Shown here piece by piece: positions 2,165 through 55,614 of a stretch of DNA of 63,691 nucleotides. How positions within the stretch are numbered: position 1 is the first letter of the stretch; each line of letters starts with the position of its first letter. Source of the stretch: Octopus bimaculoides (taxonomy: Eukaryota); assembly GCF_001194135.2 (NCBI RefSeq), contig NC_068983.1, positions 145,291,258 through 145,354,948 of the forward strand, written 5' to 3'. The position numbers and the translations under genes are program-made. The notes under the pieces were generated by a model. The model searched no databases. It saw nothing but the letters and a program-made list of their open reading frames with translations, and was not told the DNA's origin.

Positions 2165-3523
2165 GACGGGATTCTTTAAAAGTTTCCGTTTGCCAAATCC
2201 ACTCAAAAAGCTTTGGTCGGTCCAAGGCTATAGTAGAAGTGCCAGGTGTTTCTTGTTACAAAGTGGAATCCTTTTTCTTGAGCGATTCCCAAACATCTTG
2301 CTGGTGAACTTTGATACGGCCACACAGTTATTCTCATAACATGTCCTTTGCTATCATTCACTTTTTATTTTACGTTTCAGTCATTGGACTGCAGCCACGC
2401 TGGGGCACTGCCTTGAAGAGTTTGGGCAAATAAATGGACCCAGTCTTATTTTAAAGTTTTGTAGTTATTCTATCGGGCTCTTGTGACGAACCACTAAGTT
2501 ACGACAGCATAAACAAACCAATGCCGGTTGTCATGTGGTAGGAGGACACACACACACGATGGGATTTTACGCAGGTTCTATCTACCACATTCCCTCACAA
2601 GGAATTGGTCGGCCTGGGGCTGTAGTAAATAATATTTGTCCAAAGTGTCACGCAGTGGTACTGAGCCCGAAACGACGTCGTTGTAAATCGAGTTTCTTAA
2701 CCACATAGTTATGCCCGCGAACATATTCCACAAAAATTCCCATCGCTGCAAATCGGAATTCTCTATTGAACTATGCCTTGCGGATTATTTTTGCACTGTC
2801 TGCATTAAACTTGTTGCTCGGTTTGAACTTGAGACAGTTTTGTAATGATGTAACGTCTATTGCCAAACACATATTTAAAAAACATTGTTCTTGCAGACGT
2901 GGCCGTGTGGTAAAAAGTTTGCTTCACCACCACATGGTCCCGAGTTCAGTCCCATTGCGTGGCAAATATTTTCTACTCTAGCCTCGGGCCAACCAAAGCC
3001 TTGTGAGTTTGGCAGACGGAAACTGAAGGAAGCCCGTTATATATACATATATATATATATACATATATNNNNNNNNNNNNNNNNNNNNNNNNNNNNNNNN
3101 NNNNNNNNNNNNNNNNNNNNNNNNNNNNNNNNNNNNNNNNNNNNNNNNNNNNNNNNNNNNNNNNNNNNNNNNNNNNNNNNNNNNNNNNNNNNNNNNNNNN
3201 NNNNNNNNNNNNNNNNNNNNNNNNNNNNNNNNNNNNNNNNNNNNNNNNNNNNNNNNNNNNNNNNNNNNNNNNNNTATATATATAGGGGACAACACCGCAC
3301 CCATATATATAGGGGGAGGGGGTTCCCCCTCCACCGCTTGACAACCAGTGTTGGTGAGTTTATGCACCCGTAACTTAGCAATTCGGCAAAAGAGAACGAT
3401 AGAATAAGTACCAAGCTTTAAAAAATAAGTAGTGGAGTCAATTCATTCGACTAAAAATTCTTCAAGGCGGTGCCCCAGCATGGCTACAGTCTAATGACTG
3501 AAACAAAACATAAACGATAAAAG
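1396..3523. mobile_element. Cluster of the same tRNA-SINE family (1396-1738 minus, 2162-2260 minus partial, 2365-2719 minus, 2892-3523 plus)
   Basis: Shared diagnostic blocks GGGCTTCTTTCAGTTT and GGCTATAGTAGAAGAC. Further copies at 48165-48350, 52658-52980, 58230-58420 and 62690-62880. Confidence 0.8.
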
Positions 3524-5094: not shown

Positions 5095-6160
5095 TCATCA
5101 TCATCATCATTTAACGTCCGCTTTCCATGCTAGCATGGGTTGGACGATTTGACTGAGGACTGGTGAAACCGGATGGCAACACCAGGCTCCAATCTAATTT
5201 GGCAGAGTTTCTACAGCTGGATGCCCTTCCTAACGCTAACCACTCAGAGAGTGTAGTGGGTGCTTTTACGTGTCACCCGCACGAAAACAGCCACGCTCGA
5301 AATGGTGTCTTTTATGTGCCACCCGCACAAGAGCCAGTCCAGGGGCACTGGCAACGATCTCGCTCGAAAACCCTANNNNNNNNNNNNNNNNNNNNNNNNN
5401 NNNNNNNNNNNNNNNNNNNNNNNNNNNNNNNNNNNNNNNNNNNNNNNNNNNNNNNNNNNNNNNNNNNNNNNNNNNNNNNNNNNNNNNNNNNNNNNNNNNN
5501 NNNNNNNNNNNNNNNNNNNNNNNNNNNNNNNNNNNNNNNNNNNNNNNNNNNNNNNNNNNNNNNNNNNNNNNNNNNNNNNNNNNNNNNNNNNNNNNNNNNN
5601 NNNNNNNNNNNNNNNNNNNNNNNNNNNNNNNNNNNNNNNNNNNNNNNNNNNNNNNNNNNNNNNNNNNNNNNNNNNNNNNNNNNNNNNNNNNNNNNNNNNN
5701 NNNNNNNNNNNNNNNNNNNNNNNNNNNNNNNNNNNNNNNNNNNNNNNNNNNNNNNNNNNNNNNNNNNNNNNNNNNNNNNNNNNNNNNNNNNNNNNNNNNN
5801 NNNNNNNNNNNNNNNNNNNNNNNNNNNNNNNNNNNNNNNNNTTCACTGCCATGTAGCATGGCTGTTCGTACACATGCGTCATACAGTCTGCCTTTTACCC
5901 TGAGTGAGAGTCCCTTTGTCGCCAGCAGAGATAAGAGCTCTCTAAACTTGGCCCAGGCTATTCTTATTCTAGCAGTTACACTTTCAGTGCACCCACCCCC
6001 ACTACTAACTTGGTCACCCAGATAGCGGAAGCTATCAACTACCTCTAGTTTTTCTCCCTGGAATGAGATAGAAGTTGTTTCCTGTTTGTTTACAGTGTTT
6101 ATTGCACCTGAACATCTGCCACATACAAAGACTAACTTTGTAGTTAATCTGCCTTTGATA
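5095..6160 (-). mobile_element. 5'-truncated RTE-clade LINE (RT C-terminal region plus 3' UTR, (GAT)n tail), interrupted by a gap
   Basis: Peptide LEVVDSFRYLGDQVSSGGGCTESVTARIRIAWAKFRELL...GRLYDACVRTAMLHGSE is a typical RTE RT C-terminus; (CAT)n on + at 5095-5110. Confidence 0.85.
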
Positions 6161-6199
6161 TTGCTAGATGTACAAAATGAAAAATATAACAAGAATAAA

Positions 6200-9727: not shown

Positions 9728-9881
9728 CTAAACCAGTTGGTGAGAGTCATCATGACATAGAGAGAGGCTAGGCAGAACATGAAGTGAAAGAAAGAGTAGC
9801 TGTAAGCAACCTCTTCATCCTCGTTGTCCCAGACATTCTGTCCACTTTTTCCAGTTTCACCATCTTCAGATTTAGTGGAAC
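9728..9881 (-). CDS. SERINC: SERINC exon 11 ([51 protein letters not shown])
   Basis: CCTTTAG acceptor, GTTAGT donor, 154 nt. Hallmark DNE...[21 protein letters not shown] motif. Confidence 0.97.
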
Positions 9882-15823: not shown

Positions 15824-15850
15824 CTCCATAAAAAGAATCTCCAAGTTTTT
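15824..15850 (-). CDS. Candidate 27-nt alternative microexon (EKLGDSFYG) in SERINC intron 10
   Basis: TTTACAG acceptor preceded by about 100 nt of U-rich sequence, GAG|GTAATG donor, phase 1/1, open frame. Confidence 0.5.
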
Positions 15851-16147
15851 CTGTAAATATTAAGAACACCAGAATATGAAGCATATTAAGATGATATAGA
15901 TAGAAGATTAAAAGAAAGAAAAACAAAACAAAACAAACAGAACTAAAACAATAAATGAAATGAAAGGAGGAAAAACTGTGTTAGTGTCAATAATAAAACG
16001 AAAACAGAAAAAAAAAAAAATAAAGACAGCAGTTGATGAGTACAACATGATATCCATTTTGATATAATATCACAAATACAAGAGCAACAATCGAACTGTT
16101 GTAAGAACTGTGCAAGCAAAAAGCAATAAGAAGTGCAGCTGACATAC

Positions 16148-16177
16148 CAGTGTCATTTAGAAGTATGGCCTCTGTGG
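16148..16177 (-). CDS. Candidate 24/30-nt alternative microexon ((AT)EAILLNDT) in SERINC intron 10
   Basis: TTTCTCTTTCTTACCTGCTGCCCTTGTAG|CCACAG| tandem acceptors (exon starts 16177 or 16171), CTG|GTATGT donor. Both forms are in frame, phase 1/1. Confidence 0.6.
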
Positions 16178-16579
16178 CTACAAGGGCAGCAGGTAAGAAA
16201 GAGAAATCTCACAGTTAAACATCCAGACAATAAAGGACAGATTGTTGTGCATTGTGCCAATGCACATCAAACTCTCCAGGCATCACCAATCATATTAGAT
16301 CTAGCATTGTCCTGGGGACATTGGGGGCACACACACATATACATACATACATATATATACACATACATATGTATACATATCTATACACATACATTCATGT
16401 ATACATATCTATACACATACATTCATATGTACACAAATGTACATACATATACATGTGTGTACATATACACACATACTTATATACACACACATACATACAT
16501 AAATATACGTGTATAATAGATGTATATATACATATATATACACGTGTATAATATATATAATATATGTGTATAATACATA

Positions 16580-16633
<54 letters not shown>

Positions 16634-24833: not shown

Positions 24834-24907
24834 CTGTATCCAACTGCAGAATAGTTCTCTCTGACATGGTAATCTTACCCATTTGACTGTTACTTGAAGT
24901 ACGGATA
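24834..24907 (-). CDS. SERINC: SERINC exon 10 (SIRTSSNSQMGKITMSERTILQLDT)
   Basis: CTTTCAG acceptor, CAG|GTAAGA donor, 74 nt. SIRTS.NSQ motif begins the large cytoplasmic loop. Confidence 0.94.
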
Positions 24908-25745: not shown

Positions 25746-27558
25746 CTATAAAAGAAACAAATAAATATCCACGTCAATTTCAGCAACTATAAGTGATAAG
25801 ATATCTAAGGGAGTTAAATCATTTTCGACGATCAAGTATATATTTCAAGGAATTTTTTCCCTTCCAAATGTATAAAATTACATTACAAATACGGAATGAA
25901 AACACGGGTTAAATAGTGCAAGTAGAAAAAAAAAATTACATATAAGTTAAATGTTTATATCTACAAAGAAGTTTTATTAAATGGTTATCTACTAGGTGTC
26001 ATTATTTTATATCCTAAGGCTGGTAGAATTGTTAGAGCATTGGGAAAAAAAGCGCTGTGTAGTATTTCTTTCAATTCATAACCTTCTGAGTTCAAATTCC
26101 ATCAAAGTTGACTTTACCTTTCAGGGTCAATAAGATAAATGCCTGTTGAACAATGGAGTCGATATAATTTACTATTCTCCCTCACCTAAAATTGTTGGCC
26201 TTGCGCCAAAATTTGAAACCATTATTCAAATATTCAGATTCTACAAGAATGACTTCAATAGCTGAACCTTTCAGGCAAGCAGACAAAGGACTGAGATATT
26301 TGGTACCCCACAACGGAAGTGTTAAGGCCAATCCTTCAAGTGGTGTAAAGCACTCGTGGTGGTGCCATGTAAAAGCGCCCATGCAGTGCCACGTAAACGA
26401 CCCAGCACTCTCTGTAAAATGGTTGGCATTAGGAAGGGCATCCAGCTGTAGAAACCATGCCAAATCAGATTGGAGTTTGGTGCAGCTCCACAGCTTTGGT
26501 CACACCATCCAACCCATGCCAGCATGGACAACAGATGCTAAATGATGATGGGATAGTCACACTGCATCCCTGCCTGTCTCTCAGCTAAGAGACAATTGTA
26601 TATGAAACATCAATGTTACTTTGTACATATTTCAATGATATATAACAGATTTGCCCAAACAAAGCTAACTGTGACTACAAAACAACTTCTAACTTGAATA
26701 AATTTGGAAAAAAAATTGGCCACAATTGAGTGAATCAACCTAGTATCTAAAAGTAGTCATTTCATAAATTCTAAAGCAATGAAAGGGAAAGTCAATATAT
26801 TTAAAATTTAATTTGGAATGTTAAGGGCTAAAAAACCAAATATTCTACCATTTCTGCCACATTAACACCTTAGTAACAAGAAAGATAGTGAGAGCCTTTA
26901 CATGGTTGCTCAGCCTGCTAGAAATAACAGCAAGTTTCTTTCAAATTGTACACTAGTACAACCAGCTATCACTCAAAAGTAAATTTAGCTTGGTATCATG
27001 TACCATAATTTTGCTAATTGCTTTAATTTTAATAACCATGAGCCATATTTTAAAAAACAGACATGTTAGACACTCCAAATACACTATATCTGGAGGGAAA
27101 TAGATGGTCATAGCCACAATGTCTTTGGTTATATCTTACTTAATCCCTTCGCTCCCTGTGGAACATAGATCATTGACGATTTTTCTCCACTGTTCTCAAC
27201 ATTGTGCTGTTCAGTTTTGAATTGTCATCCATGCTTCTGTAACTGCTTTTTTTCTAGATAGGGGTGTTGGCCCTACACAAACTCATTTTTATTTCTGGGA
27301 AAAGGTGGCTCATATTAATCTGGCATCTAACCATTGACTTGTCCAGCAGGGAAGTCTGCAACATGAATTGGACCTGGTTCTTCAGGTTAAATCTAAAATA
27401 AACTAGACCTATATAAACAAACCACTAAAAGGTAACAACAATAATCAAAATTAATAAATCTGTCTATATTAGAGAAGTAAGACGACAAATTTGTGGGGAG
27501 CCAAAGCAGTTGGTTGAATGAGTAAATTATGAACAAGAAAACTGAAAGGTAAGTTTAC

Positions 27559-31189: not shown

Positions 31190-31910
31190 GCACAACCTTC
31201 GAACATTGGGCCTTACCAAGGCAATGACTAGTGACTGGGACCTTTGGAGATATGCTGTGCTTGAGAAGACCCAACAAGTGAGACCATAGCCCATGGCTTA
31301 TACCAGTGGGTGTAACCAGCCCAGTTATGAATACCCCTCATTCATTGGACAATAAACCTTGCTTGTGATGACCTATTGAGGCAAGTGAAATCAAAATCAA
31401 AATTGCTGACATGGCCGATGACAGTACCGCCTGATTGGCAATCATGCGAGTGGAACGTTAAAAGCACATCTGAACATGGGGTGTAACCGGTCCACTTATG
31501 AGTACCCTTCATTCTATGGACAATGAACTTTGCTTGTAAAGACCTATTGAGGCTAGTGTAAACAAAATCACCATTCGAGCGTGATCGTTGCCAGCGTCGC
31601 TTTACTGGCACATGAAAAACGACATTCGAGCATGGTCGTTGCCAGTGCCGCTGAACTGGCTCCCATGCAGGTAGCACATAAAAATACCTTTGGAGCGTGG
31701 TCGTTGCCAGAACCCCCTGACTGGCCCTCGTGCCAGTGGCACATACAAGCACCTACTAGACTCTTGGAGTGGTTGGCGTTAGGAAGAGCATCCAGCTGTA
31801 GAAACATTGCCAGATCAAATTGAGCCTGGTGCAGCCTCTGGCTCACCAGTCCTCAGTCAAACTGTCCAACCCATGCCAGCATGGAAAGTGGACGTAAAAC
31901 GATGATGATG
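31190..31910 (+). mobile_element. RTE LINE 3' end (LRTLGLT.AMT.D.DLWRYAV.EKT, 3' UTR, (GAT)n tail)
   Basis: Matches 18990-19090 and the tail seen in other copies. Confidence 0.8.
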
Positions 31911-55581: not shown

Positions 55582-55614
55582 ACTGGTCCCGATACTACCT
55601 ATAATGCAGCCCAT
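55582..55614 (-). CDS. SERINC: SERINC coding exon 1 (MGCIIGSIGTS)
   Basis: ATG GGC TGC ATT ATA GGT AGT ATC GGG ACC AGT followed by a GTAAGT donor; 33 nt, phase 0. The MG start and length match SERINC first exons, and it joins in frame to LACCCG. Confidence 0.9.

What the first reader, a model, noticed from the sequence alone, without database searches (positions are those of the whole stretch)
16148..16230. 24/30-nt microexon with a UGCUGC motif at the 3' splice site and tandem acceptors
Seen: TTTAAC (branch-like), then TTTCTCTTTCTTACC, then TGCTGC, then CCTTGTAG|CCACAG|exon|GTATGT. Established: UGC between the pyrimidine tract and the AG is the enhancer used by SRRM4/eMIC at neural microexons. 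The peptide EAILLNDT resembles the end of exon 10 (ERTILQLDT) and the loop of vertebrate SERINC1 as I recall it (ESTLIED). Joined to exon 10 it forms DTEAILL, an acidic-dileucine-like sorting motif (inference).
Basis: partly seen in the sequence, partly recalled or inferred. Interest (0 to 1): 0.7.

Follow-up and report, generated by a model that had tools for sequence, protein, structure and literature searches.

The report
Annotated octopus SERINC alternative microexon
The flagged sequence is a real, alternatively spliced 30-base exon of the Octopus bimaculoides SERINC membrane-protein gene; it is already in RefSeq as isoform X1, is conserved with its flanking UGCUGC motif from octopus to cuttlefish, and its regulator and function are still untested.

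Summary
The sequence is as described. On the minus strand it reads TTTAAC, pyrimidine tract, TGCTGC, TAG|CCACAG|, exon, GTATGT at 16219-16142. The window is 100% identical to Octopus bimaculoides chromosome CM046603.1.

- **The exon is real.** Splicing exon 10, 16177-16148 and exon 11 reproduces RefSeq XP_014777282.1 (SERINC isoform X1, 463 aa) residue for residue. One assembled RNA contig (Logan SRR32601320) carries both junctions without a mismatch.
- **Only the 30-nt form (ATEAILLNDT) is seen.** The 24-nt form appears in none of 23 cephalopod sequences, nor as an exact full-length protein in the collection.
- **It is a cassette.** Isoform X3 skips it.
- **It is conserved.** The exon, both AGs, the donor, the pyrimidine tract and the TGCTGC are invariant in O. 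sinensis, Argonauta and Sepia. Between octopus and Sepia, only exon 11 and a 125-nt island around this exon align across 15 kb.
- **The arrangement is old.** An oyster has two microexons in the same order and phase, without UGC.

Dependence on eMIC/SRRM, neural specificity and a sorting function fit the architecture but are untested. The DTEAILL junction is not formed by the observed isoform. The exon is a known annotation, so interest is modest.

The parts
16148..16177 (-). Alternative cassette exon A (30 nt, phase 1-1), CCACAGAGGCCATACTTCTAAATGACACTG. It inserts ATEAILLNDT between ..ERTILQLDT and GSTKSEDG..
   Evidence: Its inclusion gives a protein identical to XP_014777282.1, isoform X1. 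The junction string is found with 0 mismatches in Logan RNA contig L005. It is present in O. sinensis, Argonauta and Sepia genomes and in a decapodiform transcript.
16178..16180 (-). The acceptor that is used, TAG|.
   Evidence: The exon starts with CCACAG in L005 and CTACAG in L006. The TAG is invariant in 4 genomes.
16172..16174 (-).
   Evidence: It is conserved, but it lies in coding sequence (ACA GAG). No protein with LDT-EAILLNDT exists among the 23 cephalopod cluster members, and the exact full-length 24-nt forms are not in the collection.
16186..16191 (-). TGCTGC (UGCUGC), 9-14 nt upstream of the used AG.
   Evidence: It is invariant in O. bimaculoides, O. sinensis, Argonauta (expanded to TGTTGCTGCTGCTGC) and Sepia. 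It is rare by chance near an AG: 10 of 781.
16192..16206 (-). Pyrimidine tract TTTCTCTTTCTTACC, which contains UCUC.
   Evidence: It shows one C/T change in Sepia across the four genomes.
16214..16219 (-). Branch-point-like TTTAAC. The putative branch A is at 16215, 37 nt from the acceptor G.
   Evidence: It reads TTTAAC, TTTAAT and TCTAAT in the four genomes, and all fit YUNAY. It is a prediction only.
16142..16147 (-). Donor GTATGT.
   Evidence: It is invariant in the four genomes and has a matrix score of 7.9. O. vulgaris model CAI9719505.1 reads through it, i.e. intron retention.
16120..16241 (-). Conserved island around exon A (about 64 nt upstream and 28 nt downstream).
   Evidence: Apart from exon 11, it is the only segment of the 15.4-kb exon 10 to exon 11 interval that aligns between Octopus and Sepia (82% over 125 nt, E 9e-26).
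15824..15850 (-). Alternative cassette exon B (27 nt, phase 1-1), AAAAACTTGGAGATTCTTTTTATGGAG, encoding EKLGDSFYG.
   Evidence: Its inclusion gives a protein identical to XP_014777283.1, isoform X2. It is conserved in O. sinensis and Argonauta.
24834..24907 (-). Constitutive exon 10 (..SIRTSSNSQMGKITMSERTILQLDT).
9728..9881 (-). Constitutive exon 11 ([34 protein letters not shown]..).

Best explanation
Window 16177-16148 (minus strand) is a genuine, alternatively included 30-nt cassette exon of the Octopus bimaculoides SERINC gene (RefSeq 'serine incorporator 1').

Shown:
- Inclusion gives isoform X1, skipping gives X3, and a neighbouring 27-nt cassette gives X2.
- The exon adds ATEAILLNDT to the long loop between the transmembrane segments encoded by exon 9 and exon 11.
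- The exon and about 90 nt of flanking intron, including the UGCUGC, are conserved across coleoid cephalopods.
- Only the upstream TAG acceptor is seen in products.

By homology to human SERINC5 and SERINC3, this loop corresponds to cytoplasmic loop ICL4.

Inferred:
- Inclusion is controlled by a tissue-specific factor that reads the UGC/YGCY elements placed between a distant branch point plus pyrimidine tract and the AG. An eMIC-bearing Srrm234 acting in neurons is the most likely factor.
- The insert adds a second acidic-hydrophobic patch (E-x-x-L-L, flanked by threonines). That patch modulates trafficking of the protein or partner binding of the loop.
For: - Identity: the window is 100% identical to GCA_001194135.2 CM046603.1. 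The spliced models equal XP_014777282.1, XP_014777283.1 and XP_014777284.1 exactly. Pfam Serinc matches at E 7e-165.
- Transcript: Logan contig SRR32601320_19792 encodes the full X1 protein and contains exon 10|30 nt|exon 11 with 0 mismatches. Decapodiform RNA contigs exist with and without ATEAILLNDN.
- Conservation: alignment A2 of four genomes, and the conserved island between Octopus and Sepia.
- Chance: the decoy statistics.
- Architecture: a UCUC..UGC bipartite enhancer between a distant branch point/pyrimidine tract and the AG is the described SRRM3/4 and fly eMIC layout.
- Loop function: ICL4 of SERINC5 and SERINC3 carries trafficking and Nef-response determinants.
- Cassettes at this junction in other protostomes share a [DE]xx(x)L[ILV] core.
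Against: - No tissue-resolved expression data could be reached, so neural specificity is unknown.
- No test of any trans-acting factor was possible.
- CUGCUGCC is equally a YGCY (Muscleblind) site.
- The acceptor is not weak (score 10.0), unlike many eMIC-dependent exons.
- An AG lies 6-7 nt downstream of the putative branch point.
- The oyster microexons at the same junction have no UGC.
- Drosophila TMS1 does not occur in the held supplementary text of the fly eMIC paper.
- The insert fits neither the strict [DE]XXXL[LI] nor DXXLL.
- The SERINC5 ICL4 acidic cluster did not bind AP-2 mu2 in vitro.
Confidence: 0.85

Rival explanations
1. The exon is real, but the conserved CUGCUGCC upstream and the UGCU/UGCC motifs downstream (UUGCUUUUUGCUUGC) are Muscleblind (MBNL, YGCY) response elements. 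Inclusion would then be set by MBNL-type or other factors such as CELF or PTB acting on the UCUC tract, not by the eMIC.
For: The invariant CTGCTGCC contains overlapping UGCU and UGCC. Argonauta expands it to TGTTGCTGCTGCTGCC. The downstream intron keeps TTGCTTGC in all four genomes. YGCY as the MBNL motif, and position-dependent MBNL activity, are established knowledge and were not tested here. The acceptor is strong rather than weak.
Against: The position of the UGC, directly between pyrimidine tract and AG, is the most specific hallmark reported for SRRM3/4 and eMIC exons. The two factors are not mutually exclusive.
Confidence: 0.25
2. The two AGs are true tandem acceptors, and a 24-nt isoform (LDT-EAILLNDT, creating DTEAILL) is made at a functionally relevant level.
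For: Both AGs are present and conserved. CAG is intrinsically a good acceptor and scores 8.9.
Against: None of the 9 inclusion-form cephalopod proteins (RefSeq, ENA or Logan) uses it. Exact 24-nt full-length forms of O. bimaculoides and O. sinensis are absent from the 15-billion-protein collection. Conservation of the CAG is explained by coding (Thr-Glu). The first AG downstream of the branch point is normally chosen (established knowledge).
Confidence: 0.1
3. Exon A arose by duplication of the 3' end of exon 10 and survives as a second copy of the E-x-(x)-I-L-x-(x)-D-T motif.
For: TILQLDT against AILLNDT gives 4 of 7 identities, anchored at a donor of the same phase. Only 6 of 9387 open windows in intron 10 do as well. 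The four shared residues all differ at the third codon position. The motif [DE].[VILT][IL]L.{1,2}[DE]T occurs only at these two places in six frames of the window, though that pattern was written after seeing both sequences.
Against: There is no nucleotide similarity above shuffled or random-intron controls between the two regions. The oyster cassette GDAPLVD shows the exon predates cephalopods, so any duplication would be very old and unprovable here.
Confidence: 0.25
4. It is a chance pseudo-exon or a gene-prediction artefact with no biological role.
For: Long introns hold many decoy splice sites. RefSeq X-isoforms are computational models.
Against: An independent RNA assembly carries the junctions. 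Inclusion and skipping transcripts exist in decapodiforms. Near-perfect conservation extends to Sepia, where the rest of the intron is unalignable. The chance expectation is 0.035.
Confidence: 0.02

Closest known systems
RefSeq models of the same gene: O. bimaculoides serine incorporator 1 isoforms X1/X2/X3 (XP_014777282.1, XP_014777283.1, XP_014777284.1), with O. sinensis XP_029634468.1-70.1 and O. vulgaris CAI9719501-05
   Same: They are identical. The window's spliced products equal these proteins residue for residue, and the 30-nt exon is what distinguishes X1 from X3.
   Different: Nothing differs for the exon itself. The annotation says nothing about the UGCUGC, conservation, regulation or function, and no paper describing it was found.
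SRRM3/4- (vertebrate) and Srrm234-eMIC- (fly) dependent neural microexons
   Same: It is a short frame-preserving cassette in a surface or cytoplasmic loop. It has a UCUC-containing pyrimidine tract followed by UGC just upstream of the AG, a branch point about 37 nt away, a good donor, and highly conserved flanking intron (papers).
   Different: It is 30 nt, just above the 3-27-nt definition. The acceptor is not weak. Neural specificity and factor dependence are untested. The gene is not among the described eMIC targets that were checked.
Microexons at the same junction of other protostome SERINC genes, e.g. Crassostrea virginica 21-nt GDAPLVD and 15-nt ADSYR
   Same: They share the intron, the phase (1-1) and the order (an acidic-L-[LV] cassette first, a D-S-[FY]-[YR] cassette second). 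All are alternatively used in RefSeq isoforms.
   Different: Lengths and sequences differ. The oyster acceptors have no UGC. Homology is inferred from position and a short motif only.
Cytoplasmic loop 4 (ICL4) determinants of human SERINC5 and SERINC3 (two hydrophobic residues, the EDTEE and SGASDEED acidic clusters)
   Same: It is the same loop between the same transmembrane segments. The loop combines hydrophobic residues and acidic clusters implicated in AP-1/AP-2-linked trafficking and the Nef response.
   Different: Those are constitutive sequences in vertebrate paralogues. Here a hydrophobic-acidic patch is supplied by an optional exon, and no adaptor binding has been shown.

Membership tests
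SERINC / TMS1 family (Pfam PF03348) | A full-length match to the Serinc profile. | tested here: met
   E 7e-165 over profile positions 1-434 of 434. The protein is identical to the RefSeq octopus SERINC isoforms.
Alternative cassette microexon | An exon flanked by AG and GT, with both inclusion and skipping seen in transcripts or annotation. | tested here: met
   X1 against X3. The RNA contig carries both junctions. Decapodiform RNA contigs exist with and without the exon.
Alternative cassette microexon | Length: 27 nt or less on the strict definition, or 51 nt or less on the broad definition. | tested here: inconclusive
   The observed form is 30 nt, so it meets the 51-nt limit but not the 27-nt limit. 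The neighbouring exon B (27 nt) meets both.
eMIC / SRRM3/4-dependent neural microexon | A UGC between the pyrimidine tract (UCUC) and the 3' AG. | tested here: met
   TTTCTCTTTCTTACC-TGCTGC-CCTTGTAG, invariant in 4 cephalopod genomes.
eMIC / SRRM3/4-dependent neural microexon | A distant branch point, a long AG-exclusion zone and a weak 3' splice site. | tested here: inconclusive
   The putative branch A is 37 nt from the AG, and 28 nt after a nearby AG are AG-free. However, the acceptor score of 10.0 is as good as those of the constitutive exons.
eMIC / SRRM3/4-dependent neural microexon | Neuron-enriched inclusion. | not testable with these tools
   No tissue metadata or read-level data were available. 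The only hint is that, in the decapodiform cluster, skipping forms sit on far more contigs than inclusion forms.
eMIC / SRRM3/4-dependent neural microexon | Loss of inclusion when the eMIC factor or the UGC is removed. | not testable with these tools
   This needs an experiment.
Tandem (alternative) 3' splice sites | Both AGs used, giving products that differ by 6 nt. | tested here: not met
   Only the TAG|16177 products were found. The 24-nt forms are absent. Low-level use is not excluded.
Acidic dileucine sorting signal [DE]XXXL[LI], or GGA signal DXXLL | A match to the consensus in the expressed protein. | tested here: not met
The expressed junction is LDTATEAILLNDTG. EAILL is EXXLL, with Glu rather than Asp and one residue too short for [DE]XXXL[LI].

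The most novel reading that the evidence does not exclude
The SERINC ICL4-equivalent loop carries an ancient pair of alternative microexons, shared at least by bivalves and cephalopods. The pair toggles an acidic-hydrophobic ([DE]xxL[LIV]) trafficking signal. In coleoid cephalopods the first of the pair has been placed under a UGC-dependent, eMIC-type neuronal splicing switch. That would make SERINC trafficking, or its lipid-related function, neuron-specific in an invertebrate with a large brain.
Probability: 0.2. Interest if true: 0.6.

Novelty: already known. Interest (0 to 1): 0.3.

Why it matters
The exon itself adds nothing new, because it has been in RefSeq as isoform X1 of the octopus SERINC gene.

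What the analysis adds is threefold:
- The exon sits in a roughly 120-nt island that has stayed almost unchanged since octopuses and cuttlefish diverged.
- The UGCUGC at its acceptor is part of that invariant block.
- The same loop junction holds two alternative microexons in an oyster as well.

This gives a concrete, testable example for asking whether the UGC/eMIC microexon code described in vertebrates and flies also operates in cephalopod nervous systems. It also allows a test of whether splicing tunes the loop that controls trafficking in human SERINC3 and SERINC5.

Tried and rejected
- **Short protein query.** An 83-aa query (exon 10 + insert + exon 11) returned only 54 fragments, none with the insert. 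I wrongly took this to mean the species was absent from the collection. The full-length query fixed that.
- **Distant genomic relatives.** L001-L003 (ENA metagenome contigs with 76-84% identical exon 11) show no microexon homologue within 10 kb upstream. The weak tblastn hits (EAILM, AIFLN) have no splice sites.
- **Repeat or transposon origin.** The region is unique in the window.
- **Coding on the other strand or a nested gene in intron 10.** There are only low-complexity ORFs.
- **Recent duplication of exon 10.** The local alignment is no better than shuffles.
- **Upstream hairpin 16277-16235.** It is not conserved beyond Octopus.
- **Literature.** Nothing relevant for serinc+microexon, microexon+octopus/cephalopod+eMIC, or the two SRA run numbers. 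TMS1, CG4672 and FBgn0028399 do not occur in the held supplements of the fly eMIC paper.
- **Genomic locus of the shrimp 18-aa cassette.** The protein is not on record.
- **24-nt isoform.** Exact look-ups failed.

Full report
**Observation.**
- gTTTAAC at 16219-16214;
- the pyrimidine tract TTTCTCTTTCTTACC at 16206-16192;
- TGCTGC at 16191-16186;
- CCTTGTAG ending at 16178;
- CCACAG, then AGGCCATACTTCTAAATGACACTG ending at 16148;
- GTATGT at 16147-16142.

Exon 10 ends at 24834 in phase 1 (..GAT ACA G|gtaaga). Exon 11 begins at 9881 (ttag|GT TCC..). A 24-nt or a 30-nt exon therefore stays in frame, giving EAILLNDT or ATEAILLNDT.

**Gene context.** I used a SERINC3 sequence recalled from memory only as a probe, together with fragments returned by the first protein search. 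tblastn placed SERINC exons on the minus strand from 36155 down to about 7800. I then read the splice junctions by eye. Exon 1 was found at 55614-55582, encoding MGCIIGSIGTS. The assembled protein matches Pfam Serinc over the whole profile (E 7e-165).

**Is the candidate more than chance?**
- A generic splice-site weight matrix, with frequencies written from memory and intron 10 composition as background, scores the two acceptors 10.0 and 8.9 and the donor 7.9. These lie inside the range of the 11 constitutive exons.
- At those thresholds the candidate is the only open, frame-preserving 9-51-nt exon in intron 10, in all 27 kb of the gene's introns, and in the whole window on both strands and in all phases.
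- A first-order Markov simulation of intron 10 gives 0.035 such exons.
- The region is not repeated elsewhere in the window.
- Intron 10 holds no convincing ORF.

**Identity and annotation.** The first, short protein query found only fragments. A full-length query found P0055, annotated 'serine incorporator 3-like [Octopus vulgaris]' and 'serine incorporator 1 isoform X1 [Octopus sinensis]'. It is 98% identical and 463 aa long, and it reads ..ERTILQLDT-ATEAILLNDT-GSTKSED...

The members of its 90% cluster are the three RefSeq isoforms of O. bimaculoides and O. sinensis plus five O. vulgaris models. Splicing the window three ways gives proteins identical, residue for residue, to three RefSeq entries:
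- with 16177-16148: XP_014777282.1 (X1, 463 aa);
- with 15850-15824: XP_014777283.1 (X2, 462 aa);
- with neither: XP_014777284.1 (X3, 453 aa).

The window is 100% identical to O. bimaculoides chromosome CM046603.1. The feature is therefore already annotated, in its 30-nt form.

**Transcript evidence.** X1 is also encoded contiguously on a 1711-nt Logan contig assembled from run SRR32601320. The 53-nt string spanning exon 10|30 nt|exon 11 occurs in it without a mismatch.

In the decapodiform cluster (representative P0057; Sepia pharaonis CAE1332312.1 and 13 Logan sequences):
- Five members read ADT(DK)-ATEAILLNDN-GS(T/N)KSDD, and the others skip the exon.
- One such contig (L006, SRR7548197) shows GATACTG|CTACAGAGGCC..AATG|GATCC, which is the same upstream acceptor.
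- Skipping forms sit on many more contigs than inclusion forms. This hints at restricted inclusion but is not a measurement.

No sequence anywhere has the 24-nt form. Exact full-length 24-nt versions for O. bimaculoides and O. sinensis are not in the collection. One O. vulgaris model reads through the donor (GMSAALLIAFC.., intron retention). Another contains both cassettes in the order A then B.

**Conservation.** Genomic loci were fetched for O. sinensis (L009), Argonauta hians (L008) and Sepia pharaonis (L007). All contain the exon. The four-way alignment shows:
- The exon differs at only two positions: GCC to GCT (synonymous), and ACT to AAT in Sepia (Thr to Asn).
- The TAG acceptor, the internal CAG, GTATGT, GAGATTTCT(C/T)TTTCTTAC and TGCTGCC are invariant.
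- Argonauta has an expanded TGTTGCTGCTGCTGCC.
- The branch-like element is TTTAAC, TTTAAT or TCTAAT.
- Downstream, GTATGTC.GCTG and CTT.TTGCTTGC are also kept.

Over the 15.4 kb from exon 10 to exon 11, blastn between Octopus and Sepia aligns only two segments. One is exon 11. The other is a 125-nt island at 16241-16120, at 82% identity and E 9e-26. From my own knowledge, these lineages split roughly 250-300 million years ago. This pattern is typical of regulated alternative exons.

**A second microexon.** Isoform X2 led to a 27-nt cassette at 15850-15824. It reads tatttacag|AAAAACTTGGAGATTCTTTTTATGGAG|gtaatg and encodes EKLGDSFYG. It lies 298 nt downstream of exon A. It is conserved in O. sinensis and, as 30 nt, in Argonauta. 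A simple pattern search did not detect it in Sepia.

**Depth of the arrangement.** Many protostome SERINC proteins differ exactly after ..ILQxD[TS]. Examples:
- oysters: GDAPLVD, GDAQLID and ADSYR;
- heterobranch gastropods: SDENLIG;
- decapod crustaceans: RRSLGDIPLVSNEV.

In the Crassostrea virginica locus (L010) these are two microexons in the same intron, phase and order as in octopus. The first is 21 nt (ttttag|GTGATGCTCCACTAGTGGATG|gtatga). The second is 15 nt (aacag|CTGACAGCTACCGAG|gtgagt). Neither has a UGC near its acceptor. The first cassettes share a [DE]-x-x-(x)-L-[ILV] core, and the second share D-S-[FY]-[YR]. Homology is inferred from position and these short motifs only.

**Relation to exon 10.** Anchored at the donor, TILQLDT and AILLNDT share 4 of 7 residues. 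Only 6 of 9387 open windows in intron 10 do as well. All four shared residues differ at the third codon position. At the nucleotide level the two regions are no more alike than controls. An ancient duplication is possible but cannot be shown.

**Mechanism.** The literature retrieved describes the enhancer of SRRM3/4-dependent microexons as a bipartite UCUCUC..UGC element. It lies between a distant branch point plus pyrimidine tract and the AG. UGC is present in 74-79% of such exons (10.1101/2024.09.17.613571). Fly eMIC-dependent exons show UGC near the 3' splice site, UCUC-rich tracts and long AG-exclusion zones (PMC8797185).

The octopus exon has this layout, and the layout is conserved. That makes a UGC-reading factor the most likely regulator. 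It is not proof, for these reasons:
- The acceptor is strong rather than weak.
- CUGCUGCC and the conserved downstream UGCU and UGCC motifs are equally good YGCY (Muscleblind) sites. This is established knowledge and was not tested here.
- No tissue data were reachable.

On the protein side, the insert lies in the loop that corresponds to ICL4 of human SERINC5 and SERINC3. ICL4 carries hydrophobic and acidic determinants of AP-linked trafficking and of the response to HIV-1 Nef (10.1101/590646). It fits neither [DE]XXXL[LI] nor DXXLL. A role in sorting is therefore a reasonable hypothesis, supported only by the recurrent [DE]xxL[LIV] core in other phyla.

**Verdict.** The 24-nt variant and the specific junction motif are unsupported, and the regulator and function are untested. 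Because the exon is already in public annotation, its novelty is low. The conservation of the regulatory island and the ancient two-microexon arrangement are modestly interesting additions.

Noticed in passing
window 15824-15850 (minus strand): A second alternative microexon of 27 nt (EKLGDSFYG) lies 298 nt downstream of the flagged one. It defines RefSeq isoform X2, is conserved in O. sinensis and Argonauta, and was not detected in Sepia by a simple pattern.
   Followed up: yes
L010 7670-7690 and 8467-8481 (Crassostrea virginica): The oyster SERINC gene has two microexons (21 nt GDAPLVD, 15 nt ADSYR) in the same intron, phase and order as octopus exons A and B, but without UGC near the acceptors. 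Similar cassettes appear in gastropod, crustacean and tick SERINC isoforms.
   Followed up: partly
window 16235-16277: A 9-bp perfect hairpin (TGTGCATTG-GCA-CAATGCACA) sits about 60 nt upstream of the acceptor. It is kept in O. sinensis with one mismatch, but not in Argonauta or Sepia, so it is probably not functional.
   Followed up: partly
window 16328-16630: A compound microsatellite lies 150-450 nt upstream of the exon on the transcribed strand. It consists of degenerate TA/CA-rich repeats (10-35-nt periods) and a perfect (GT)24 on the plus strand, which is (AC)24 in the pre-mRNA. Any effect on splicing is unknown.
   Followed up: no
window 55582-55614 (minus strand): Exon 1 of the SERINC gene (MGCIIGSIGTS|gtaagt) lies about 19 kb upstream of exon 2. 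The gene therefore spans about 48 kb of the window, with intron 10 (15 kb) and intron 1 as the two long introns.
   Followed up: yes
window about 1750-2150, 3070-3270 and 5370-5850; ORF 5266-6192 (minus strand): There are runs of N (assembly gaps) bordered by TA microsatellites. One interrupts a reverse-transcriptase-like ORF (..FRYLGDQVSSGGGCTESV..), probably a LINE fragment.
   Followed up: no
window 5163-5300, 26185-26499, 31342-31752: Similar short ORF peptides recur (..FLQLDALPNANH.., ..RASQGVLATT..), which suggests a dispersed SINE-like repeat inside and near the gene.
   Followed up: no
L001 10052-10955 (ENA ERZ26696912 contig): An unidentified animal contig in a metagenome assembly carries six tandem partial copies of the 3' half of SERINC exon 11, at 84-87% identity to the octopus exon.
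   Followed up: no
P0177 and P0180 (O. vulgaris CAI9719505.1, CAI9719501.1): One O. vulgaris model retains the intron after exon A, ending in GMSAALLIAFC.. and a premature stop. Another includes exons A and B together within a 569-aa model.
   Followed up: partly
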